Below are positions 6,518 to 44,596 of a stretch of 64,000 nt of DNA, piece after piece (position 1 is the stretch's first letter; each line of letters begins with the position of its first letter). The translations under genes and the position numbers were made by a program. The notes beneath the pieces were generated by a model. The model made no database searches, was not told where the DNA came from, and worked only from the letters and a program-made list of their open reading frames with translations. This DNA comes from Paramoeba atlantica (taxonomy: Eukaryota > Protista > Discosea), in NCBI GenBank assembly GCA_977017575.1, contig CDRNVI010000071.1, forward strand, positions 62,001 to 126,000. The letters are read 5' to 3'.

Positions 6518-6705
6518 TGCGCCATCTATGTCCCCCCTTTGAAGACCATTGGGCGTGGTTCTGCCTCGCCTTACCCAGATGCAACAGTCGGTTGCAGTGC
6601 ATCCCTCCGGCTGTGTAAAGAGGTGGTAAGTCGTCTGGGGAAAATTCTGACACCCCCTTACTTCACCACACGTCTATTGACTAAATGTGGTGAAGTAAGG
6701 GGGGA
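6518..6705 (+). repeat. Diverged relative of the internal SINE at 12433-13011, plus an 18-bp perfect hairpin
   Basis: 6518-6640 aligns by eye with the reverse complement of about 12635-12765 (e.g. GTCGGTTGCAGTGC..CCCTCC.GCTG.GTAAAGAGGTGGT.AGT). Arms 6653-6670 and 6686-6703 are perfectly complementary. Confidence 0.7.
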
Positions 6706-9087: not shown

Positions 9088-9165
9088 TATTATTTCCCGA
9101 TCCTCTTTCAACATCTCTATTTCAAATAGAGAAAATGTGTCAAAAGCATGGAGAAAATGTGTCAA

Positions 9166-9320
9166 AAAGTATAATTTATGACCTAGGGTTATAAATGACA
9201 TTTTATGTACAATGCTTGAGGATGAATAACGAGTATACACAGGCCCTAGCCTGTTTAATATGGGCTGGAAGGGCAATGGTAGTCAATGTGGCTGGATCCG
9301 AGGATCTAGACTACAAAAAA
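9166..9320. repeat. Inverted terminal repeat (3' end of element), 155 bp
   Basis: Base-by-base reverse complement of 14952-15106, no mismatches found. Confidence 0.95.
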
Positions 9321-9550
9321 TCATTGACCCTTCTCCGGCTTAACGGAGACGCAGTGCCTGAATTAGGATGCCTTTCCTTTGAGTACCTGCCTCAAAGTGG
9401 ATATCCGAACCGGCTAACTGCGCCGCGTGCATGAAGCTTCCGACCTTTCGTTATTGAGTGCGTCTGACTCCTAATAGGCACTCAGTAAATGCAACATGCA
9501 CGTAAGTGCATGTTGTGCATACCAACGGGCGAATTGGACATGCTCGCAAA

Positions 9551-11407
9551 TTAGATTTCAGATATCATCTGACGGGAACAATAAGACTTCCCCGATGCCA
9601 TCCACAATTTCTGAGCACGTTGAATGTGAAATTTTGAGTTTCTCTGTCGTCGACGCTTTTCAATCTCTGATACTGCGCGCTCCGGGCGAGTATAGATGTC
9701 TGCAAAATTGTCTTCTGAAGGCGTGTCAACAACAACAATATACAAACCCGTTTGTTGAATGAGTCCAGTAATTCGAGCAACTACAGTATCAATCTTCTCA
9801 ATTGGGCTGTATCCTTTGGTAACGGCTTTGCCTGCCGCTACATTATCGGATATGATATATGCCTGATCGGCGTTTTGCAAGAATGCATGCTGAACTCCCA
9901 TTTCCAAAGCTAAAATTTCCGCTAAAGAAATCTCGATTGGAGGTGCCTCAATGTCTCCACCAACACATTTTACGCTTCCTTCGGAATCTTGAAAGGTACC
10001 AGTACCACATACGAAACTGAATTCGTCAAGTCCTTTCACAGCCCAACGGGTCGGTGTGGCGTCTACGGCAAGGAGAACGACGCGCTGTCTTCTTACTGAT
10101 AGATGTGATTTAGGATGTATCCAGTTACATTCCAAACGCTCAACGATCTTTTTCAGAGAAAGTATTGTCTTACTGAGATCTGGAATAACCTCATCCCATT
10201 TTTGAATCGCCCCTAAAGTACTCTGGATGCGCGTGAACCGTCCGAGTAGCGCCCGATCAAAATTCAGCACGGAATACGCAAACCAAAGAAACCCCAAAAG
10301 CGCGTACAATGATCGCGGAGTTGGAAGAAAGTCCTGTTCTGCGGCTTGCTTCCATACCTTTAGAATGGCGTCATCAAGAGTCCACTGCACTCCCAACTCC
10401 GTTATACCTATTTTAACCCCACAATAGGTGAAGATGCTCCCTATTCCTTCCGATTCTATGTACTTAAGTCGCAAAGTTGCTCTAATTTCGAAGTTTTTCT
10501 TTACGATGCCTACCCATTCCGCAATGTGGGATTTAGGAGCAACCAAGAGGAGTGAGTCATATACGAGAACAAGCATACCTCCCCACAGGAGCTCATCGCA
10601 TGCGGGAGCTATTGTTTCTTCGTAAATATAATCGGGAACGCATAGGCGCTTTCGCTGATCTTCGTTTATGTTGAGTAACACTCCACACACGATTCCTTGA
10701 CAAATCCCACAAGCTTTGTCATATCCCATAGGTAAAACTGTGCATTGTAAAATTTGAGATCCACTGCGCAAACAACATCTTTTACGAAGATTTGGGCCTA
10801 TGGGGATCTGGAAATATGCGTTAGCTATGTCGGCATGCACGATACGCAGCTTAAGCTTTCGAAAATCTAGGCTTCGCAAGCGCTCTATAAAGCGGTTGAT
10901 TCCTAAGAGTGAAAAGGGCACACCTCTGGTTGTACTTATGGAATTTAGTGTACGCATATCAAGAATTGCCCTCGCTTGCCCTTCACGCTTTAAAACAGCA
11001 AAATATTTTGAAAATATTGGTACCGGTTGTTCGTTTCTAAGACGCCAGTAAGAGTTGAAATTCTCGAGTACACCTACATATTCTAGGTAAGCAATGTGTT
11101 CATGCCACCGGTCAGTTGTTGTCTTCAAAAGGATATTTTCATCTGGCTCGTCCTGTAAAGGGTCCTCGTTTAACAATTCCAGTGCTCGCCACACAAAAGG
11201 GATATTCGCTAAGGAACTACCTATTAAGAAAGTTCCGCCACCCACGTTCCGCAATTCTGCCAGAGGCGTCTGAGAATTAACTATTTTTCCTGGGGAATAA
11301 TCTGACTGTTTACCTTGCAATAGCCGTAAATCTATATCTGGGCCTGAACTATGCATCCACAAAATTGATCGTTTTTTATTTTTTATTTTCATAGCTAAAG
11401 AAATCAC
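9551..11407 (-). CDS. Reverse transcriptase + RNase H of the YR retroelement (open ORF, 618 aa)
   Basis: RT motifs REGQARAILDMRTLN, HADIANAYFQIPI, VLPMGY, LVYDSLLL (variant YxDD). RNase H motifs VDAT, ISLAEILAL, ISDN, SEDNFADIYTR. Confidence 0.9.
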   Translation of the reverse strand: MISLAMKIKNKKRSILWMHSSGPDIDLRLLQGKQSDYSPGKIVNSQTPLAELRNVGGGTFLIGSSLANIPFVWRALELLNEDPLQDEPDENILLKTTTDRWHEHIAYLEYVGVLENFNSYWRLRNEQPVPIFSKYFAVLKREGQARAILDMRTLNSISTTRGVPFSLLGINRFIERLRSLDFRKLKLRIVHADIANAYFQIPIGPNLRKRCCLRSGSQILQCTVLPMGYDKACGICQGIVCGVLLNINEDQRKRLCVPDYIYEETIAPACDELLWGGMLVLVYDSLLLVAPKSHIAEWVGIVKKNFEIRATLRLKYIESEGIGSIFTYCGVKIGITELGVQWTLDDAILKVWKQAAEQDFLPTPRSLYALLGFLWFAYSVLNFDRALLGRFTRIQSTLGAIQKWDEVIPDLSKTILSLKKIVERLECNWIHPKSHLSVRRQRVVLLAVDATPTRWAVKGLDEFSFVCGTGTFQDSEGSVKCVGGDIEAPPIEISLAEILALEMGVQHAFLQNADQAYIISDNVAAGKAVTKGYSPIEKIDTVVARITGLIQQTGLYIVVVDTPSEDNFADIYTRPERAVSEIEKRRRQRNSKFHIQRAQKLWMASGKSYCSRQMISEI

Positions 11408-12432
11408 ATTATTTTGTTAAAACATGAGCAGTTTCGTTTCCTTGGAACAATGCAAGCTATTGCTCCGACACTCGTACTACTGAACACGGTTTCGTACCGC
11501 ACTGCATACCTATCAAGCATACAGTCGATAGACTGCATAACATGTACTTCGCCCCTTTCTATACGAATTCCGAACATTGTTTTTTTATTTTTATGCTAAA
11601 GTAGTGATATGTGCATGGCTGCTTGTCAAACTTCAATCATTTATTCGTTCGATCGTTGTTTGAACGAACGTAATGGAGCAAGGTGCCTTCTGTTGTGTCA
11701 GACAATACTGCGCCAATTGTTGTACACACGCGTTCTAGACGAGCGGAGTGTCCGGTATGCCGAAGGCAATGAGGAGAGAACACAAGACCTTCAGGCCATC
11801 CAAACTTGTCTTGAGCTTTACGCAGTGCATCTTTCAAATGCAGATTTATGCATCTAGGAAACAAGTGCCCTGAGACACTAACTGGGCGCAATTCAACAAG
11901 CGAATCAATGCCTACTTTGGAACAGCATACATGGCGGCCGTTCATCCTACCTTTTACTTTTCTCAAAAAGATTTCCCCTTTTTCCTCATCTACATATGTC
12001 AACATCAGTCAAGTCCAAAAGGTTTCCTGGTCGTATTGGAGCCTCAAGGAATAGGGAGGCTGCAACAGCAAGTATCTTTCTAAAGTGCGCGTCATATACA
12101 ATATTCTGTTTCGTGCACCACACGCAAACCTTGGAAACATCCCACTCGGCAGCAATGAAAACCAGGAAGTCTGTCATCATGGTCCGCTCCAAAACTCCCT
12201 TTTCCCGAGGCAAATGAAGTGAGGCACATCCTTTAATCATTTTAGAAAGTGACTTGTCTTCCAACCAATCAACAATTTTACCCTTTTTTCTTTGATCGTG
12301 AAGGAGTGCGGACCATATAACTGTCACACCACTGCCCATTTTCTGGCATTTCCAATTCCACAGGAAAGCCTCAAATTCCTCTCTTGTGCAATCCGCCTCG
12401 CATACTGGTGGTACTCCACGGTAGTGCGACAT

Positions 12433-13011
12433 GTTTGTTTGTTTATCATGCGCTCTTTGGCGCAGAGATAATCCCCTTAATGCGACGGCCGATATCATCG
12501 GCACATAATCCGCCCACAATGGATGTCGCCAAAGGGGGTTCGACACGGACTCGGTCGGTAGAGAGGTCCAGGCAACTCGCCTCTCTTTACGCAGCCGGAG
12601 GGGCGTACTGCAACCGACTCGGTCCCAGTCGGTAGAGGTGGTCCAGGCAACTCACCACCTCTTTACGCAGCAGGAGGGGCGCACTGCAACCGACCGCTGC
12701 CTCGCGATAATGCGAGGCGGAGTCACGCCCAGTGGTCCTCAAGGGAGGCCACCATGGCGCATAGCTCCCGGGAAGAGACGGGCGCGAGAAGAAGAAAGCC
12801 GGGGAGGGAAGAAAACTCACTCAAGGAGTGAGCCGGGGAGGGGTGAAAAGTCGGAAGTACGTCCCCTACTTCCACGACAAGAGGGACAGTCCCTGCTAGC
12901 CGTCAGCCGGAAACGGGCATTTAAAAGGAAAATGTATGCCCGTTTCCGGGAAATGAAAGGAAGGTCTAGCAAAATGTACCAACAAGGTACAGAAACTGTA
13001 TCTTTATCCTT
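12433..13011 (-). mobile_element. SINE-like non-autonomous retroelement with SL-RNA-like head and (CAAA)n tail
   Basis: Excision restores in-frame S-T-L-M-S-H-Y in the YR gene. The head GATAAAGATACAGTTTCTGTACCTTGTTG is followed by GTACA; the body is hairpin-rich; it ends ATGATAAACAAACAAAC. Confidence 0.8.
12980..13008 (-). ncRNA. Spliced-leader-exon-like 29-mer followed by a GT donor
   Basis: Contains the ACAGTTTCTGTAC core conserved in kinetoplastid/diplonemid SL exons and ends TTG at the same spacing. TGTAC/GTACA across the junction recreates SL RNA stem-loop I. Confidence 0.7.
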
Positions 13012-13622
13012 CAGAGTGCTCAAGGAAGCAGAGTAAGTTCGACGTGTTCCTTCACTTAATGAAGCATCCATAAGTTCTTCGCGATTTTTTTCACTCGGAC
13101 ACTTTACTACGATTTCTCTGCTAAAGCGCTTTGGCATTCAATGAGAAAGACTAGAAGACGTTTCCTTCTAAGACACGTGAACCAGGCTATTTAACCTGGA
13201 TAATTGAAATGTTGTACCTGCAAAGATGAAGTTCGCTACAGAAATCACGGTCAAATTCCCGCCCTCGTTTCATTTCTCATCACATGTAAACAAAGGCACA
13301 ATGCACATGTACATTGTATGACAATATATATCAACAAACAACAAAACAAACATTCAGCCCAGTTCCAATTCACTGCGCTATCTTTTCTGTCAGTAGCCCA
13401 AATTTTTCTTATTCTTGTATATCCTTCCAACTGCCAAAGCCCACACATAGATACCAAAGTCAACTGTTTCGTATTCCTAACTTGCAATACGATATAATCT
13501 ATTTACTTTAGACTTTAAATTAGTCTGTACCATAGCACTACCAGTGAAACTAATGAAACTGAATTAAGATCAATAGGACATGTTTATGACCGATACCGGT
13601 GCCCCACCACTTGGGATACGCC

Positions 13623-14844
13623 TCAGACTATTTGGGTCTCGCTTGGACACATTTTTTGAATATGCCCATATCCGCCACAGTTATTACATTGAAGTGAGCG
13701 AGCTCTGGCTTTTTCTTTCGGTAGGCAAAACTTTCCAGCGTGCCCTATGCCGTCGCATATGGAGCACTTGAGGGTTGGGCTTTTCAATGTAGACTTCATG
13801 AACCGATAGGATCCCCGAGAATAATGCGCTTCCGCTTGGAGTCGCGACCGACTGCCTTGATGAAATACCATTTCTCCTTTGTTTAAATTCACATAGTCAG
13901 CTATCATCTCGTGAGACCCTATCACTTTTTCCAATTTTCTGACCAGTACATCACGTCCGAGGGGAGATAAGGAACCTCCTACTTACCCGTCCTTATTCCC
14001 AGCCTTTTGCTGCAAGCTGTTTCTTGTCAAAGAGCTCCCGACAATAGCTTGATAAAGACTGTTGGGGCATACGTATTCGAATCCCTGCGGAAGTTCTCGA
14101 ATATAGTGCAAAACCCAAACATCGGCTAACATACGAAAGACACGCACTTTCTCCATATCACCAGAAGGGGTTCCCCAGACACGCCCCCCCGTTCGATCTT
14201 CCATGAACTCGGCGGTAAGCTTACCCCATTCCCCATCCTTTAGAAGAGCTGCACGCTCCTTCAAAACTTCGAGGTTTGGCCCACATGCGACACCAAAGTT
14301 TTCAAGTCGAAGGCACGTTAAACCCCGCTGAAATTCTGCGGAAACCTTCGGATATGACTGTGTACCGATAGTCCTCTGCCATCGAAAGAGAAATTTTACG
14401 ATTCGTCTTTCGTTCTTCTCCACTTCGTCGCGTGCTTTCTCCTATCACTGAAAGAATGGCTTCAGTCATGGATCCAGAAACTGACTTGAACACTGTAGAT
14501 AGATTCCGAAGATCAGGTACATGTTCAGTAGTGGCTGACTCAGGAGCACCTTGTGAAATACACGCTCCCGGAGGAGACATCGACTCGCTCGTCTTGAGTT
14601 GCGGTAACACACCTGTCACCATACTCATCAGAGAAATAATTTCGTCGTTCGCCTCCTGCGTGATTCTAAGTCGGTTGGCCTCTTCTGCAGCAATCATCAT
14701 ACCTTGCTGCTCACGAAGAAAAAGAACCGAGTCCAGCAATTCATTGTCTCTTGCCTCCTGTTGCATGGTACGATCTGCCTTCTTGCGGAAACTTCCCTTT
14801 GAAGAATCACTCTTGTGCTTCGCCACCGAGGATACAAGAAACAA
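13623..14844 (-). pseudogene. Gag-like gene of the YR element, split into 3 frames, with two CCHC zinc knuckles
   Basis: CSICDGIGHAGKFC and CNNCGGYGHIQKMC; coiled-coil-like N-terminal ORF 14302-14844; frameshifts near 14420 and 13960. Confidence 0.75.
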
Positions 14845-14951
14845 AGTATATGGAAAGTAAACACTCTTTTCGTTGTTACACTGGTCAGTCCACCTCTACT
14901 TTTTCAATCACAGTCTTCTCAATATTCGTAGGATCTTTTTCTTAAAACTTT

Positions 14952-15106
14952 TTTTTTGTAGTCTAGATCCTCGGATCCAGCCACATTGACTACCATTGCC
15001 CTTCCAGCCCATATTAAACAGGCTAGGGCCTGTGTATACTCGTTATTCATCCTCAAGCATTGTACATAAAATGTCATTTATAACCCTAGGTCATAAATTA
15101 TACTTT
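14952..15106. repeat. Inverted terminal repeat (5' end of element), 155 bp
   Basis: Reverse complement of 9166-9320. Confidence 0.95.
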
Positions 15107-15107
15107 A

Positions 15108-15648
15108 TGTACAAACCTTGAGTCTTACTAACTCCGCCGTTTTCAGGCGTGAACCATGAGAGTCATTTTTGTTCACCTTCACCCCCCTTCCATTGACTTC
15201 GAATTAAACATTCAGAAGTGCAAGTGCTGACAACGTCTGAACAATGGGATATCTTGTCTCTTTTCATATTCACACACATATTCACATATGGTACCAAAGC
15301 GCCCTTTTGCTACCCAATGGGAGCGCAAAATAGGCTTAACCCCACCCGTCAGACATTAGGAGCCAGCAAGCCTACTCTCAAAGCATCACAGCTTCGCTTA
15401 GGCCCCACCCCTCAGGTATTATGGGCCAGTAACTCTACTCTCAAAGCATCACAGCTTCGGTCAGGCCTGATCCTTCAGGCACTATGGGCCCGACTCATTC
15501 AACCCTGCTCATTCAAGACAAATACACTTATGTACCATGGTGGCAAATAATCTTTCGAGTTACCCCTCCTCCCCCGGTCTTGTTGTGTTGACCTGCTCCA
15601 GGCTTGGGACTGGAAACTGCGGAGTTAGTAAGACTCAAGGTTTGTACA
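15108..15648. mobile_element. MITE, 541 bp, perfect 30-bp TIRs, TA target duplication
   Basis: tgtacaaaccttgagtcttactaactccgc (15108-15137) and its reverse complement (15619-15648); TA at 15106-7 and 15649-50; internal about 64-bp tandem at 15361-15490. Confidence 0.85.
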
Positions 15649-39387: not shown

Positions 39388-39870
39388 TCAAATAAGGAAA
39401 CCTGCAGGAGGCGTACCGACTATACGGGAAATATTATTTCGTTGGAGGCGGCAGTGACGCATGATGTTCGGCAAGTGGTTTACATCGATTTCGCCAGTAA
39501 AACCAGCGCCCTCTGCCCATAATCCGATGAGACCTTTGGGAAGATGTGTAAGGTTTATCGACCCTACGAAATTGTTGTCTGCTAAAGAAATGTATTCTAA
39601 CGTCGCAGGCAGTTTCGTTAAATCGACGGGGCCTTCAAACCTATTGTTGTGCAACATGATGGCCTCCAGGGATGATGGAAGTGATGTCAGATCTACGAAA
39701 TCAGTAAATTTATTTTCGCTTATCGAAAATCCTTGCAAGTGTCCTGGGAGTTGAGAAAAAGCTATGGGACCGTGCAAACTATTCTCTGCAACCCAAAATT
39801 CGAGAATAGTTCCGGCGAGAATTTCCGTGTTTAAATGTCCGAAAATCTTGCTGTTTACACAGTTTAATTT
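39388..39870 (-). pseudogene. 3' half of an LRR gene split by the non-LTR element
   Basis: KLNCVNSKIFGHLNTEILAGTILEFWVAENSLHGPIAFSQLP... continues in frame from the 5' half at 44608-44891. Confidence 0.85.
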
Positions 39871-39952
39871 ATCATACCTTTATAAGGCAGAGAATATGCG
39901 GATAGGCCTGGGGGGAGCATATGACGCTGCCCAGACCTATCTTTTACAGACG

Positions 39953-42900
39953 TTATACCCGTCCTTCTGTCCAAACGGCAGACTCGCGGTTCTGCCAGAT
40001 AATGAAACTGCCTCGAAGGGCGGTCTGCATTAGACTTTCTCGACATTTTTCCGCAAGCTTTGTGTCCTCGTCAAAGAGGAGGTTGAGGTTTCGACAAGAT
40101 GTGAGTAACGAGCCGCGGGCTCCCACTTCGAATACAACAAGGGTCGTCCTAGGGTGATTAATGCGTCGTTCATGGAAGAGAGCATTATATTTACGGGATT
40201 TGCCCTCGTGCGCCTGAGACTGGTTCTCTTCCCAGGGCACAGTGAGCTCAATGATGAACTCACTTCCATCCTTAAGTGTAATCAAACCGTCGGGGCGAAG
40301 AAGGTCCTCACGGGTGCCGAGCCATGCCGGGGCATTCCTAAATCCGGGGATATCTAGGTGTACGCTCTTGGTATACGGCGAACGCATCAAGTGTTTTCCG
40401 AGCTCTTCAAGCAACATGTCATGACGGAGGGTGTATCTCCCTTGCTGAAGGGACTCTTTGCACCCCGAGAGCACGTGCCTTGTTGTTTGAGGTTCGAGTT
40501 TACATATGGGACATGTTACACTCGCACGCCGGAGACCCCAAAGCCGAAGATTGGTTCTGGATGGTAGGGGTGAAAGCGTTAGTACTGAAGCTGCGAAGCG
40601 AGAAAGTTTTTCACTGTTGAGGTTGTTCAGGGCCGCTGAGAACTCTTTCGCGAGATCAGCCTCGGAGGGGAGGCTCCACCATTTTGCTGCTGTCGGTGCC
40701 CGTCTCTGAAGCTGATTTATGACGTAAGATTCATGGTTATCACGGGCTATCTGTTGCGCCTTCCGCGCGTCATGAAGGTGTTGAATGGCGTCAGCGCTTG
40801 GACGAATATAACCAGAGGATCGTTTTTCTTCTTCTTGCTTGATTCGGGCTCGTAGTGCCGCCTGTATCGATGGGTCCCGCGACTTGTGCATCTGTGTTAA
40901 GGCTAGGATAGAGCATTCGGACCACAGCTTGGATAAACTTTTAAGGTTCCACCCTCGTTCAGTATAAAGAATTTCGGTGCAAGTCGTGGATGCTGCATTG
41001 ATCCATTTCTTAAGGTGACGTGTAATTCTTTTCTGCAATCGCAATACAAAGTTGAAAGTGACACACGGGTGAACGGTGAGGGCGTAGCGCAGACGGGATA
41101 CGATCGCTCTGTTGTAGATCCAAAGTTTTTCGGGGAGACTGTGTGCACTCTCGTCGACATTCCGAAGCCATGTTCTTAGTCTGACATCCAGTTTTTTGAA
41201 AAGTTCTTTCGCTTGCTGTGCTCCTGGTGCTATGGTCATTCCAAGAAAAGTGCTTCCACGGTCACATATATGTGGTATCGCTTTGCCTTCGATACTGAGT
41301 CTCGGCTTCCTGGTCATGTAACCCGGGTGCTCACTGCCTTCACGCATGGACATGCACTGTGTACGGCTCTTGTCTACGTTGATTGAGAGTCCTATTCGTC
41401 TCAGTGCAGTTTCGAGTGTGTTGGTCGCGTGCTGCATGTCGGTATCGCTGCTAGTCAGTATCGTCAGGTCGTCAACGTAGGCTTTCAGGAAATGCCTTGG
41501 AGTATCTGGGTAGTCAAGGCCATACCGGGGGCACGATTGCTTGAGGTATCGTAGTACAGTTTCCATCACTAAGTTGAAAATTATGGGCGACAGGGTATCA
41601 CCTTGTAGTACGCCTCTGTGTATCGGTATAGCACGTGACAAACCTTCGACACACTTAATACGCATTTCCGCATGTGAATACATGCTTTCAACGTAGGACA
41701 CGATTTGTGGCGAGACGTTTGCCCATCGCAGTGCCTCGAAGATGATGTTATGGGGGACCGAGCCGAATGCATTGCTGAGATCAAACTGCGTGAGACGATA
41801 TTGCCTTTTGTTTCGACGGTAATATTGTAGTATTTCGGAGAGAGCTTGCGTGTGTTCCAGTGTACCACTCATCTTCGGAAGAAAGCCTTTTTGAACGCTT
41901 GTATCTAGGAGGCCGGAGGACACGGTATGCGTCAAAATTTGGTGTCCGATCATGCTATTGAAAAGTTTGCCTAGAGCGCTAGTCAGGGAGATAGGTCTCC
42001 AGTTTTTCGGGATGTGTTTTTCGCCTCCTTTGTGAATGAGTTTAACTACGGCGGAGGACCAGCATGGCGGGCAGATGCCGTAGCGCAGAAGATCATTAAA
42101 CGTGTTCGCTATACGGGGGTACAGGTATTTGCATTGTTTTAGAAGTGCGTTTGTAATCGTATCACGCCCTGGCGCGCTTGCGCTTCTTTTGCTGCTGAGC
42201 GCGTCTGCGACATCTTGCGCGGTCAGTGGAGACCATTCCATTTCGTTGATGGGTAGAGGACCAAGTACGTTGTTCGGCGGCAGGCGATGCTCTTCGGCGG
42301 GAGGTGCTGTGCTTTCTGTGAAATATTTTTCTATCGTAGGTAAATCGCATTCAGGATATTCGGCGGTGGCGGAGGTCGAGGGGCGGTCCAAGGCCTCGGA
42401 TGCTGCTGTCCACGGGTTCCGCGTGAATCTGCTATGGGCCCATTGTCTTTCTAGCTGTTTCCTATGTGCTTTGGCCTCTTCTGTGTATGTTTTCTCTAGC
42501 TTCTCACTTTCCTTAATGCAGCGACGGAGCTCTTGGCGTTCCGTTCCGTGTGTGTAGCGTAGTGATTTCTTTTGGTTGCGTATGTGTTTCGTCATTTCGT
42601 GGGCTGCATTTTCAGACGAAAGTGGCCGGTGCTTGAATCGGGCGTGTCCGCGTTTCGATCGCGTGAGGAAACCTTTAGTGGGGTTAATCTCTTGTGCAAT
42701 TTCGTATGCCGCCACTGCCAGAGAGGCACCCAGAAGTTCTGCGTTTTTCACTGCGATTTCCGGGGTGTCTACTGTTGGATATTGCAGCCTTCGGCATGTA
42801 TCGTATGCCTTGTTTTCAACCGCCTTCCATTGATCGTCGTTAAGCTTTAGGCACATTTTTCCCCCTGTTATGATTTTGTGTTGTTCAAGCAGATGGAGGC

Positions 42901-44539
42901 GCTCCCTTTCGCTGGTTTCATCCCATGATGGAACTCGAAGTTCCGTAGTGTGCGAAGGAGGAGGAAGAGGAGAAGGTCGGACGAGGGGCTCATTGTACCT
43001 AAGCGGTCCATATATCTTACAGCATTTATGCAGACAGCGTAGCTTGGCCGAGCATCGGTGACGACATGGTTCCACGTGTACGGTGTTCTGTGGGTAATGC
43101 GCTGCACTGCTAGGCGTCGCGTCAGGGAGTGGCGCAGGGTTGTGCATAGTGCTATCTTTGTTGTCAGTGCACGTCGCATCCGTGATTTGCACAGTATGTT
43201 GGTTCCCGTTTGTTGGTCCGTTGATGCTAGTATTGGGAAGGCGGTAGAGGTTTATAACGTTACGCATGGCCCAACCAGCCAATTTAGCAGCTTTCCGTAG
43301 GAAATCACTATCGTTGTCGTTGAGGTTTGGTGTTACGGAGTTCTGGTTGATGTCGACCCCCTCTGTTTGGGTTCCCTCGGCAGGTGGGACCATTTGGACA
43401 TCAGGTGGAGGTTGTGTTGCCGGGTTTAACCCGCGTTCTAAAGTTGTGTGAGCGCCCTCCCGTGATATTGCGTTGCATAGCTTCGTTTGTAGATTTTCAT
43501 TTGTAGAAGTCGCGGAAGTTGGAAAGTCCAGATGCGAAGATTTAATGCCTCGTTTACAACATAGATGTCCGCACGTAGCTTTGTTCTTGCAGTAATGACG
43601 ACATGGATGCGGGGCGGAAGGTTCATCATGTACGGTAGGTTTGCGGTGACCGTTCGACGCATGTGTGTTGCATTTTGTATGTGTCGCAGGTTCCGAAGAG
43701 GTGCTTTCCGGCGTATATTTACTTGGATCTCCTGGGTTGGTGTTATTTGCAGTTCCTTCTGGGACGATCTCAGGTGGCAGTGCTCCTTCTGATGAGCAAT
43801 ATGTAGCGTCCTCACTCGGCAGCGGTCCATAGATTTTACAGCACTTGTGAGCACAGGAGAGTTTGCTCAAGCAGCGGTGCTTGCATGGTCCCTTGTGTTG
43901 ATCAGTTTTACCCTTCTGGGGCTTTGGCGTTCGTGGGGGAGCGATTTTATGAGGGGATTCTTCTATCCTGCGCGGCTTCTCGTATTCCGCGGTTTCAGTG
44001 CTTGGTGTTTCCTGGTTTCTTATGAGCTCGATTTTTATGTGCTTCAGTCCCGATATTTCTCTTCCCTGTATGGCCTTCAGGGCTGCCTTATTTAGCGTGC
44101 TTGGGGTGGAATACTTGTCTCGCAGGCTGAGGGCAGGGTCGGTGTGCATCGAGACCCAGTTTGGGTGCAGGGAGATGGTGTAGGGGTGTTCATTCCTCGT
44201 AACCTTTATATAGTCGCACGCGTTATGCTCCACGAGCTCCTCAAAGGTGGTGTGTTCAGCTACGAGATCGTGTGCTGATGCACACTTACTCAGCAGTTTC
44301 GTGATAGCTACTTCCGCACCTTGTCGGGATGGAATTCTTTGTCTGACTATGGACCATTGGCTCGCGGTCTTAATGTCCGGGAAATACGTCCAATGCAGAT
44401 CAGTGAGGCGTCGTATCTTAACGGGCCGTGATCTGCTGTGGACGAAGTGCAGGGTTTGCGTCTGTACGCCGCCGGAAGCTCGAGGGAGGTCCGGCAGCGC
44501 ATCGTCAACATTCCGCGGAGAAGTGGGATTGTCGGACAT
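39953..44539 (-). CDS. Single ORF: 3 Cys/His zinc-finger repeats + RT + CCHC knuckle + RLE nuclease
   Basis: APGRD, NWRPISL, QKGF, FDLSNAFGSVPH, GVLQGDTLSPIIF, AYVDDL; CPICKLEPQTTRHVLSGC, RHD, RPD, IIELTV. Uninterrupted; first ATG inside the element at 44539. Confidence 0.93.
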   Translation of the reverse strand: MSDNPTSPRNVDDALPDLPRASGGVQTQTLHFVHSRSRPVKIRRLTDLHWTYFPDIKTASQWSIVRQRIPSRQGAEVAITKLLSKCASAHDLVAEHTTFEELVEHNACDYIKVTRNEHPYTISLHPNWVSMHTDPALSLRDKYSTPSTLNKAALKAIQGREISGLKHIKIELIRNQETPSTETAEYEKPRRIEESPHKIAPPRTPKPQKGKTDQHKGPCKHRCLSKLSCAHKCCKIYGPLPSEDATYCSSEGALPPEIVPEGTANNTNPGDPSKYTPESTSSEPATHTKCNTHASNGHRKPTVHDEPSAPHPCRHYCKNKATCGHLCCKRGIKSSHLDFPTSATSTNENLQTKLCNAISREGAHTTLERGLNPATQPPPDVQMVPPAEGTQTEGVDINQNSVTPNLNDNDSDFLRKAAKLAGWAMRNVINLYRLPNTSINGPTNGNQHTVQITDATCTDNKDSTMHNPAPLPDATPSSAAHYPQNTVHVEPCRHRCSAKLRCLHKCCKIYGPLRYNEPLVRPSPLPPPSHTTELRVPSWDETSERERLHLLEQHKIITGGKMCLKLNDDQWKAVENKAYDTCRRLQYPTVDTPEIAVKNAELLGASLAVAAYEIAQEINPTKGFLTRSKRGHARFKHRPLSSENAAHEMTKHIRNQKKSLRYTHGTERQELRRCIKESEKLEKTYTEEAKAHRKQLERQWAHSRFTRNPWTAASEALDRPSTSATAEYPECDLPTIEKYFTESTAPPAEEHRLPPNNVLGPLPINEMEWSPLTAQDVADALSSKRSASAPGRDTITNALLKQCKYLYPRIANTFNDLLRYGICPPCWSSAVVKLIHKGGEKHIPKNWRPISLTSALGKLFNSMIGHQILTHTVSSGLLDTSVQKGFLPKMSGTLEHTQALSEILQYYRRNKRQYRLTQFDLSNAFGSVPHNIIFEALRWANVSPQIVSYVESMYSHAEMRIKCVEGLSRAIPIHRGVLQGDTLSPIIFNLVMETVLRYLKQSCPRYGLDYPDTPRHFLKAYVDDLTILTSSDTDMQHATNTLETALRRIGLSINVDKSRTQCMSMREGSEHPGYMTRKPRLSIEGKAIPHICDRGSTFLGMTIAPGAQQAKELFKKLDVRLRTWLRNVDESAHSLPEKLWIYNRAIVSRLRYALTVHPCVTFNFVLRLQKRITRHLKKWINAASTTCTEILYTERGWNLKSLSKLWSECSILALTQMHKSRDPSIQAALRARIKQEEEKRSSGYIRPSADAIQHLHDARKAQQIARDNHESYVINQLQRRAPTAAKWWSLPSEADLAKEFSAALNNLNSEKLSRFAASVLTLSPLPSRTNLRLWGLRRASVTCPICKLEPQTTRHVLSGCKESLQQGRYTLRHDMLLEELGKHLMRSPYTKSVHLDIPGFRNAPAWLGTREDLLRPDGLITLKDGSEFIIELTVPWEENQSQAHEGKSRKYNALFHERRINHPRTTLVVFEVGARGSLLTSCRNLNLLFDEDTKLAEKCRESLMQTALRGSFIIWQNRESAVWTEGRV

Positions 44540-44567
44540 GTTGGAGATACAGTTTAGAAAAAAAAAA

Positions 44568-44596
44568 CAACAAGGTACAGAAACTGTATCTTTATC
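44568..44596 (-). ncRNA. Spliced-leader-exon-like 29-mer at the LINE 5' end
   Basis: Identical to 12980-13008; followed by T10 rather than a GT donor. Confidence 0.7.

What the first reader, a model, noticed from the sequence alone, without database searches (positions are those of the whole stretch)
12433..13011. SINE apparently derived from the SL RNA gene itself (exon + splice donor)
Seen: the SL-like 29-mer is followed directly by GTACA. TGTAC-CTTGTTG-GTACA forms a stem-loop across the junction, like SL RNA stem-loop I. The insert has a (CAAA)n tail and its removal restores the YR reading frame. Known: SINE heads usually derive from tRNA, 7SL, 5S or snRNA, and a retro-copied trans-spliced mRNA would have lost the donor GT. 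Inference: the head came from SL RNA or the SL gene rather than from trans-splicing. Inserted in sense in a polycistron, it could offer an ectopic 5' splice donor.
Basis: partly seen in the sequence, partly recalled or inferred. Interest (0 to 1): 0.85.

Follow-up and report, generated by a model that had tools for sequence, protein, structure and literature searches.

The report
Spliced-leader-headed SINE, not SL-gene copy
A 574-base non-coding retroposon that starts with the last 28 bases of the host's spliced leader has landed inside a tyrosine-recombinase retrotransposon gene; it belongs to a large family driven by R2/CRE-like LINEs, and its leader piece was most likely picked up by trans-splicing, not copied from the spliced-leader RNA gene.

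Summary
On the minus strand, 12432-13005 is a real insertion: public contigs of the same organism carry the YR element without it, and that form reads as one open frame. It starts with spliced-leader (SL) nt 11-38, followed by GTACATTTTGCTAG. It ends in a LINE-type 3' module with a short (CAAA)3 tail.

I found about 17 more copies in 260 kb of the same genome. First-stage notes report the family on other pieces of this genome (s1-369773, s1-369803, s1-369741).

The reading "SL gene exon plus donor" is not supported:
- A 5S-linked native SL RNA gene, taken from two metagenome contigs, has an intron that starts GTATGAGAAGC.
- Past GTA, the SINE matches that intron only at chance level (7/25, 20/75).
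- The head lacks SL nt 1-10.
- R2-like LINEs carry the same 28-mer with no GT after it.
- All three SINE subfamilies include copies where the SL is joined directly after the AG that ends the 14-mer, which is the mark of trans-splicing.

Best reading: a trans-spliced, highly structured non-autonomous RNA copied by RLE LINEs that share its covarying 3' stem-loop.

Unexplained: 16 of 19 heads start at SL nt 11 (a 17th within 1 nt), the same distance from the exon end as the CZAR/SLACS cut site.

The parts
12432..13005 (-). Inserted non-autonomous retroposon (SINE-like), 574 nt. It replaces 4 nt (TTCT on the minus strand) of the host YR gene.
   Evidence: Empty-site joint 12431->13006 with AGAA between, seen in contigs of runs X1, X2 and X4. 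Summed contig depth over the insert is tens to hundreds of times that of the flanks. About 17 further copies or fragments in loci L002-L011. Whole-element RNA fold z = -6.9. No Rfam or tRNA match.
12980..13007 (-). Head: the 28-mer ATAAAGATACAGTTTCTGTACCTTGTTG, equal to nt 11-38 of the native SL exon. The AT at 13006-13007 is shared with the target.
   Evidence: Identical to the SL exon of the 5S-linked SL gene in L001/L012. The same 28-mer heads the LINE at 44568-44595.
12966..12979 (-). The 14-mer GTACATTTTGCTAG between head and body. It starts with GT and ends in a T-rich stretch plus AG that is used as a 3' splice site in sister copies.
   Evidence: Present in 9 copies. Precisely absent in L005, L011, L008(+) and L006(-9607), where the SL abuts the base after the AG; this occurs in all three subfamilies. 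Native intron is GTATGAGAAGCTTC, 6/14 identical.
12907..12949 (-). 14-bp hairpin CCGGAAACGGGCAU...AUGCCCGUUUCCGG in the SINE 5' region.
   Evidence: Fold of 12900-13005 gives z = -4.7. Kept in 14 copies, with an A-U to C-G compensatory change in the L007/L008b subfamily.
12541..12694 (-). Two tandem ~77-nt core units, 86% alike. One unit is missing in copy L002.
   Evidence: Self-BLAST and copy alignment. Unit-only matches at window 6518-6638(+) and L007 2493-2609.
12432..12468 (-). 3' module TCTCT-G[CGC CAAAGA GCG]C-ATGAT followed by the tail AAACAAACAAACA.
   Evidence: The motif is found at 21 element ends (23 hits against about 3.5 in shuffles). It has a 4-5 bp stem that covaries between SINE and LINE families: GCGC/GCGC, GCAG/CTGC, GUAG/CUAC, GCCUU/AAGGU.
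39863..44595 (-). Candidate partner LINE. It has the SL(11-38) head at 44568-44595, a 5' UTR complementary to the head, an ORF from ATG 44539 to 39953 with RT and a restriction-like endonuclease, and the same type of 3' module at 39863-39893.
   Evidence: Pfam RVT_1 at 2e-31. R2 proteins 9nl3 and 9dou match at E about 1e-32 over residues 810-1516. A CCHC knuckle and a PD..E.K motif lie at the C-terminus. Head/UTR hairpin z = -2.7. 3' module.
9163..15109 (-). Host element: a YR (DIRS/VIPER-like) retrotransposon with 158-nt inverted termini. Its recombinase ORF (13137..11986) is split by the insert.
   Evidence: Inverted repeat 9163-9320 / 14952-15109, 99% complementary. ORFs and CCHC gag knuckle. 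HCLRHTGHS box in ORF 11637-12005. Frame check.

Best explanation
The insert is one copy of an abundant family of non-autonomous, non-coding, highly structured retroposons of a euglenozoan. R2/CRE-type LINEs (RT plus restriction-like endonuclease) living in the same genome copy it into the genome.

Shown:
- It is a true insertion with an empty-site allele.
- It is multi-copy.
- It carries the same covarying 3' stem-loop module (TCTCTG-stem-ATGAW-short tail) as several LINE lineages.
- LINEs and SINEs alike start with SL nt 11-38.
- The AG that ends the 14-mer has served as an SL addition site in all three subfamilies.

Inferred:
- SINE RNA is transcribed as part of a polycistron and trans-spliced, so it carries the ordinary SL.
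- The LINE protein recognises the 3' module and reverse-transcribes the RNA at a nicked target.
- The cDNA regularly ends at SL nt 11. That is 28 nt before the exon end, the distance at which CZAR and SLACS cut SL exons.
- The GT after the SL in the long-head form is the first two bases of the element's own leader, which pairs with the SL (UGUACC/GGUACA). It is not the SL intron.

At this locus the insert simply inactivates the YR recombinase gene.
For: - Empty site and depth. Frame restored in the empty-site form.
- Copies and subfamilies.
- Heads: 19 in 260 kb. 16 start exactly at nt 11 and one more within 1 nt, one starts at nt 4, and one is truncated at about nt 20. None is followed by GTATGAG.
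- The head that reaches nt 4 (TTTAACGATAAAG) matches the native SL 5' part, so full-length SL was on the template.
- Native SL/5S unit, with an intron unlike the SINE.
- Short-head copies join the SL right after the AG in three subfamilies.
- LINE is R2-like with an RLE.
- Shared covarying 3' module.
- Partial head copies stacked 5' of some heads all restart at nt 11, as expected from a reverse-transcriptase stop and template jump.
- CZAR/SLACS cut between SL nt 11 and 12 of a 39-nt SL: PMC5814959.
- SL-tagged retrocopies are known in dinoflagellates (PMC5585692, PMC12014239). Dispersed SL exon fragments are reported in Diplonema papillatum (PMC10161547 supplement).
Against: - No source locus with AG|GTACATTTTGCTAG was found in 260 kb. 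Where long-head RNAs get their SL is therefore not shown. Daughter copies have no AG at the SL/GTACA junction, so they cannot regenerate that junction by trans-splicing.
- SL heads are perfect (28/28) across subfamilies whose bodies differ by 10-14%. This fits renewal by trans-splicing, but it also fits selection on an inherited head.
- GUA at +1 to +3 and GCU at +10 to +12 stand in the same register as in the native intron and pair with the same SL bases.
- There are no RNA data: run X5 gave no coverage.
- The native SL gene is from metagenome contigs, not from this assembly.
- The cause of the nt-11 boundary is unknown.
Confidence: 0.6

Rival explanations
1. The head is a retro-copy of the SL RNA or SL gene across the exon-intron junction, so GTACA... 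is a diverged SL intron start. The element is an SL-RNA-derived SINE carrying a potential 5' splice donor.
For: - GT follows the exon end exactly.
- The 6-bp UGUACC/GGUACA stem and the AGU/GCU pairs reproduce the top and bottom of the native stem-loop I in the same register.
- In-register identity is 6/12.
- The junction is conserved in 9 copies of three subfamilies.
Against: - The native intron starts GTATGAGAAGC. Identity after GTA is at chance level (7/25, 20/75; local alignment P = 0.27-0.92), while the exon part is 28/28.
- No SL nt 1-10, no SL-II, no Sm region and no SL-III equivalent.
- LINE heads have the same 28-mer without any intron-like sequence.
- Short-head copies show that the SL is added by splicing at the AG.
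- The hairpin alone is not significant, z = -1.6.
Confidence: 0.12
2. Target-derived head. The families descend from CRE/SLACS-like elements that cut the SL exon 28 nt before its end and duplicate the downstream target. The duplicated SL(11-38), and in the SINE about 14 nt of an old SL intron, became part of the co-transcribed element and is now inherited. It is kept perfect because the LINE protein or endonuclease needs it.
For: - The head's 5' boundary lies at exactly the CZAR/SLACS distance.
- CRE elements make target duplications and are co-transcribed with target sequence (PMC3636483).
- The LINE is RLE-type.
- LINE tails abut SINE heads in L006 and L007, as expected if the 5' edge of an SL head is still a preferred target.
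- Perfect heads across diverged subfamilies.
Against: - The head's 3' boundary is exactly the exon end in at least 5 LINE lineages with unrelated UTRs. Trans-splicing explains this; a second-strand nick does not.
- The window insertion and others are in non-SL targets without target duplication.
- One head reaches SL nt 4.
- Stacked partial heads point to an RNA-level stop.
- The short-head forms need splicing.
Confidence: 0.15
3. Template switch. The LINE reverse transcriptase reached the 5' end of a SINE RNA that began GTACA... and jumped onto an SL-bearing RNA (an mRNA 5' end or SL RNA). This added the SL piece as a chimaera, as in U6/L1 chimaeric retrocopies.
For: - Stacked partial heads and LINE-SINE tail-to-head chimaeras suggest frequent template jumps.
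- R2 reverse transcriptase is cited for template jumping in PMC3636483.
Against: - A jump would have to land exactly on the last base of the SL exon every time, in 9 long-head copies, 5 short-head copies and 5 LINE heads.
- Jumps go to RNA 3' ends, which would add whole SL RNA or an mRNA tail, and neither is seen.
Confidence: 0.04

Closest known systems
CRE-clade site-specific LINEs of trypanosomatids (SLACS, CZAR, CRE1/2)
   Same: Euglenozoan LINEs with RT plus a restriction-like endonuclease, tied to the spliced leader. Their cut site (between SL nt 11 and 12 of 39) lies 28 nt before the exon end, exactly where the heads here begin (PMC5814959, PMC12278014).
   Different: Those elements sit inside SL RNA genes, have poly(A) tails and make target duplications. 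Here the SL piece travels at the element's own 5' end. Copies are dispersed in non-SL sites, there is no target duplication, and the 3' end is a stem-loop module with a short tail. Clade membership of the LINE was not tested by phylogeny.
Non-autonomous partners of LINEs that share LINE ends (NARTc/RIME with L1Tc/ingi; R2-derived SIDEs)
   Same: A short non-coding element shares terminal sequence or structure with an autonomous LINE and is mobilised in trans. Both ends match: the 28-nt head and the 3' module.
   Different: The shared 5' end here is host SL sequence, not an element promoter/ribozyme such as Pr77. The body is unrelated to the LINE. The comparison with SIDEs rests on my own knowledge.
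SL-tagged retrogenes of dinoflagellates and dispersed SL-exon fragments of Diplonema papillatum
   Same: DNA-encoded spliced leader at the 5' end of retro-copied RNAs, taken as proof that a trans-spliced RNA was the template (PMC5585692, PMC12014239, PMC10161547 supplement).
   Different: Here the tag sits on whole transposon families (LINEs and a SINE), not on cellular genes. It is always cut at nt 11. The LINE 5' UTRs have evolved complementarity to it.
SINEs with heads from small RNAs (tRNA, 7SL, 5S, U1)
   Same: Short, dispersed, LINE-dependent, with a 5' end similar to a host small RNA.
   Different: Only the exon part of the SL RNA is present, and it is incomplete. There is no match to the SL RNA body, no Pol III-type promoter and no Rfam or tRNA hit.

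Membership tests
   28/28 identity to SL nt 11-38 of the 5S-linked SL gene in L001/L012.
   Native intron is GTATGAGAAGCTTCG...; the SINE has GTACATTTTGCTAGC.... In-register identity is 6/12, 7/25 and 20/75, and local alignment gives P = 0.27-0.92. Caveat: the native gene is from metagenome contigs, and beyond nt 25 it rests on a wrap-around.
   All SINE heads start at SL nt 11 or later. Upstream bases differ between copies.
LINE-dependent non-autonomous retroposon (SINE in the broad sense) | Short, non-coding, dispersed in many copies, with insertion polymorphism | tested here: met
   574 nt. Its ORFs are only antisense or spurious, with no Pfam hit. About 17 copies in 260 kb. Empty-site allele.
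LINE-dependent non-autonomous retroposon (SINE in the broad sense) | 3' end shared with an autonomous LINE of the same genome | tested here: met
   The TCTCTG-stem-ATGAW module occurs at SINE and LINE ends, with 6 different compensating stem sequences. 23 hits against about 3.5 by chance.
LINE-dependent non-autonomous retroposon (SINE in the broad sense) | Internal Pol III promoter from a small-RNA head | tested here: not met
   No tRNA, 5S or 7SL similarity. It is therefore better called SINE-like. Transcription mode was not tested.
Retro-copy of a trans-spliced RNA | SL ends exactly at the exon end and is joined to non-intron sequence at a 3' splice site (AG) of the source | tested here: inconclusive
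   Met for short-head copies: the SL is joined right after ...TTTTGCTAG or ...CCCTTTAG in three subfamilies. For the long-head form of the window copy, the exon-end boundary is met but no AG-preceded source locus was found.
R2/CRE-type (RLE) LINE, for the partner element | RT followed by a CCHC knuckle and a PD-(D/E)xK restriction-like endonuclease; no APE domain | tested here: met
   Solved R2 structures match over residues 810-1516 (E about 1e-32). Motifs CPICK...H...C and RPDG...E.T...K are present. No Exo_endo_phos hit.
CRE clade proper (SLACS/CZAR/CRE) | Insertion inside SL RNA genes between nt 11 and 12, with target duplication | tested here: not met
   The copies seen are outside SL genes and lack duplications. 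Only the nt-11 boundary of the carried head coincides. Phylogenetic placement was not tested.

The most novel reading that the evidence does not exclude
The 28-nt SL(11-38) head is not a passive tag. It is an obligatory cis-element of a LINE/SINE system descended from SL-gene-specific CRE-like elements. In this reading the LINE protein or its endonuclease reads the SL sequence, which fixes the cDNA end at nt 11 and favours insertion at the 5' edge of resident heads. The LINE 5' UTRs and the SINE's GUACA leader have evolved to pair with the SL, imitating stem-loop I of SL RNA. Thousands of SL|GU junctions would then be planted in sense inside polycistrons, where they could act as decoys or ectopic donors for the trans-splicing machinery.
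Probability: 0.2. Interest if true: 0.8.

Novelty: new variant of a known kind. Interest (0 to 1): 0.55.

Why it matters
The result links two things so far described separately in organisms that use a spliced leader: transposons that target the leader gene (the CRE clade), and retro-copies that carry a leader tag (dinoflagellate retrogenes).

Here whole LINE and SINE families carry the tag, always cut at the position where CRE elements cut the gene. The LINE untranslated regions pair with it. That gives a concrete, testable handle on three questions:
- how an R2/CRE-type enzyme defines the 5' end of its copies;
- how a site-specific element may escape its site;
- whether hundreds of leader-plus-GU junctions inside transcription units disturb splicing.

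For annotation, it matters that these heads are not SL RNA genes. They account for reports of "solitary" or "divergent" SL-like genes in this genome.

Tried and rejected
- Rfam on the window (gathering) and on 12300-13200 (permissive) gave only chance microRNA-like hits on the hairpins. Rfam on six loci gave nothing. ARAGORN gave nothing. A tRNA, 5S, 7SL, snRNA or ribozyme head is therefore rejected.
- Organism and native SL gene:
  - An exact-protein look-up of the PP1 gene failed.
  - Paper searches for the SL string and for the assembly accession found nothing.
  - The Diplonema papillatum SL differs, so that species is rejected.
  - The viral contig scan was empty.
  - A first ORF bait from L001 found nothing. 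A five-ORF bait found only a second metagenome copy of the same unit with the same ends, not this genome's own unit.
- RNA evidence: the only RNA-labelled run (X5) laid nothing on the stretch. Splicing from the SL|GT junction could not be examined.
- Descent of the SINE leader from a LINE 5' UTR is not significant (P = 0.02-0.9 on T/C-rich sequence).
- A hidden source locus AG|GTACATTTTGCTAG was not found in 260 kb.
- The protein atlas search on the LINE gave only generic RT clusters.
- Cis-splicing of the 14- or 17-nt GT...AG piece as the origin of short heads is considered unlikely, because the piece is too short for a spliceosomal intron. Sequence alone cannot distinguish it from trans-splicing.

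Full report
**What is there**

The feature lies on the minus strand. Read 5' to 3', it consists of:
- the 28-mer ATAAAGATACAGTTTCTGTACCTTGTTG (13007-12980);
- GTACATTTTGCTAG (12979-12966);
- a 14-bp hairpin (12949-12907);
- a GC-rich structured body with two ~77-nt tandem units (12694-12541);
- the end ...TCTCTGCGCCAAAGAGCGCATGATAAACAAACAAACA (to 12432).

The core 16-mer of the leader occurs twice in the window against 0.03 expected. The second copy heads a LINE at 44568-44595. Rfam and ARAGORN find no known RNA in the element. As RNA it is much more structured than shuffles (z = -6.9).

**It is a true insertion**

Contigs from three public runs of the same (coded) organism cross the YR gene without the element. 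They join 12431 to 13006 with AGAA between. The insert is therefore 12432-13005, replacing 4 nt. The AT at 13006-13007 is ambiguous between target and head.

Joined this way, the recombinase frame is open for 193 aa. With the insert it stops at aa 106. The host is a YR retrotransposon with 158-nt inverted ends at 9163-9320 and 14952-15109. There is no target duplication.

Summed contig depth over the insert is roughly 13-200 times that of the flanks, and about 700-1200 times over the head. This shows high repetition but is not an exact copy number.

**More copies**

A spurious ORF inside the element retrieved ten ORFs, all from one ENA assembly. Their contigs, L002-L011, total about 196 kb. 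They hold about 17 more copies or fragments.

The copies fall into three subfamilies that differ by 10-14% in the body and in the central module. First-stage notes report the same family on other pieces of this genome.

**The native leader gene**

A metagenome scan for the leader's 3' 20-mer gave contig L001. There the 28-mer is preceded by AACTTTAACG and followed by GTATGAGAAGCTTCGAACCATAGTG. A 5S rRNA gene lies divergently about 390 nt away. B-box-like elements are mirrored between the two genes, the layout that first-stage notes describe for this genome's SL/5S units.

One LINE head in this genome extends to TTTAACGATAAAG, which confirms the 5' part of the exon for this organism.

A second metagenome contig, L012, is 99.8% identical and has the same ends. 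The two ends of L001 overlap by 7 nt. Closing the unit gives a 38-nt exon plus an intron of about 71 nt. This folds as a textbook SL RNA: a 12-bp exon/intron stem-loop I, a small stem-loop II, a 14-bp stem-loop III and a T tract.

The SINE sequence after the leader shares GTA with the native intron, then GCT at +10 to +12. Overall in-register identity is 6/12, 7/25 and 20/75. Local alignment to the 75-nt intron gives P = 0.27-0.92.

The exon part is 28/28. Identity therefore collapses exactly at the exon end.

**Signs of trans-splicing**

In 260 kb there are 19 leader heads.
- Nine are followed by GTACATTTTGCTAG, or in one subfamily by GTACATTTTCCCTTTAG.
- Five SINE copies have the leader joined directly to the base after that AG. 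These are L005, two copies in L011, L008(+) and L006(-9607). Such short-head copies occur in all three subfamilies.
- Five heads belong to LINEs and are followed by five different 5' UTRs without GT.

Precise loss of a piece that ends in T-rich sequence plus AG, at least three times independently, is what use of that AG as a leader acceptor would give.

**The partner LINEs**

The window LINE (39863-44595) encodes RT. It matches solved R2 proteins through the C-terminal CCHC knuckle and PD..E.K nuclease.

LINE and SINE ends share a module: TCTCT, then a 4-5 bp stem closed by G and C/U, then ATGA(A/U) and a short A-rich tail. The stem sequence differs between lineages while pairing is kept, for example GCGC/GCGC, GCAG/CUGC, GUAG/CUAC and GCCUU/AAGGU. 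The two motif hits without a stem lie outside elements. SINE subfamilies differ in the tail in the same way as LINE lineages do.

LINE 5' UTRs of four lineages contain a stretch complementary to leader nt 13-31. The SINE leader has only GUACA.

**The nt-11 boundary**

Sixteen of 19 heads start exactly at leader nt 11 and a seventeenth (L009) within 1 nt. One starts at nt 4, and one is truncated at about nt 20. Nt 11 is 28 nt before the exon end. CZAR and SLACS cut the 39-nt leader between nt 11 and 12, also 28 nt before the end.

Short partial head copies stacked 5' of some heads all restart at nt 11. This looks like a reverse-transcriptase stop followed by a jump. In L006 and L007 a LINE tail abuts a SINE head, against about 0.01 such adjacencies expected. 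I cannot say whether a modified base, bound protein, RNA cleavage or the endonuclease sets this boundary.

**Conclusion**

The element is a leader-headed, LINE-dependent, non-autonomous retroposon.

Its head is best explained as the ordinary leader acquired on the RNA by trans-splicing. This is inferred for the long-head form, whose AG-preceded source I did not find.

Descent from the leader gene, donor included, is not supported, but it cannot be excluded as a remote origin. Use of the SL|GU junction as a donor is untested, because the one RNA-labelled run did not cover the region.

Leader-tagged retro-copies are known, and so are leader-gene-specific LINEs. A LINE/SINE system that carries the tag cut at the CRE site appears to be a new variant. 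I found no paper describing it.

Noticed in passing
L006 10254-10300 and L007 10616-10660 (minus strand): A LINE 3' module and tail run directly into the SL head of a SINE: 2 of 19 heads, against about 0.01 expected. This points either to a target preference for the 5' edge of SL heads or to reverse transcriptase switching from a SINE RNA onto a LINE RNA.
   Followed up: partly
window 44538-44595 (-); L002 9030-9098 (-); L006 15080-15147 (-); L007 15410-15479 (-): The 5' UTRs of four LINE lineages contain a stretch complementary to SL nt 13-31, forming a hairpin with the element's own head (z from -1.4 to -3.4).
   Followed up: partly
L006 about 15147-15175 (-); L008 11060-11085 (+); L010 10457-10520 (-): Short partial copies of the SL head (8-18 nt) are stacked just upstream of complete heads. 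Each restarts at SL nt 11 and is separated by 1-3 extra bases.
   Followed up: no
L008 17815-17849 (-): This LINE head extends to SL nt 4 (TTTAACGATAAAG...). It is the only head longer than 28 nt in the sample, and it has one mismatch in the exon (CCCTGTTG).
   Followed up: no
L011 (whole locus, 18.8 kb; contig name ends in c): The contig is flagged circular. It is built of tandem units of about 1.4-1.9 kb that hold seven short-head SINE copies or fragments. It may be a satellite seeded by the SINE, or an assembly collapse.
   Followed up: no
window 6518-6638 (+) and L007 2493-2609 (+): 79-84% matches to the SINE's 77-nt core unit only, with no SL head and no 3' module nearby. These may be fragments, or a related family that shares the core.
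   Followed up: no
L001 and L012 (whole contigs): A 1.78-kb SL/5S unit with divergent SL and 5S genes and mirrored B-box-like GGTTCGATCCC elements between them. Two independent metagenome assemblies break at the same point, 25 nt into the SL intron, which may be a graph branch caused by an element inserted at that site in some units.
   Followed up: partly
window 43005-43890 (-), within the LINE ORF: The N-terminal half of the LINE protein carries three repeats of a Cys/His motif (C.H.C..K..C.H.CC) in place of the usual R2-type zinc finger/Myb region.
   Followed up: no
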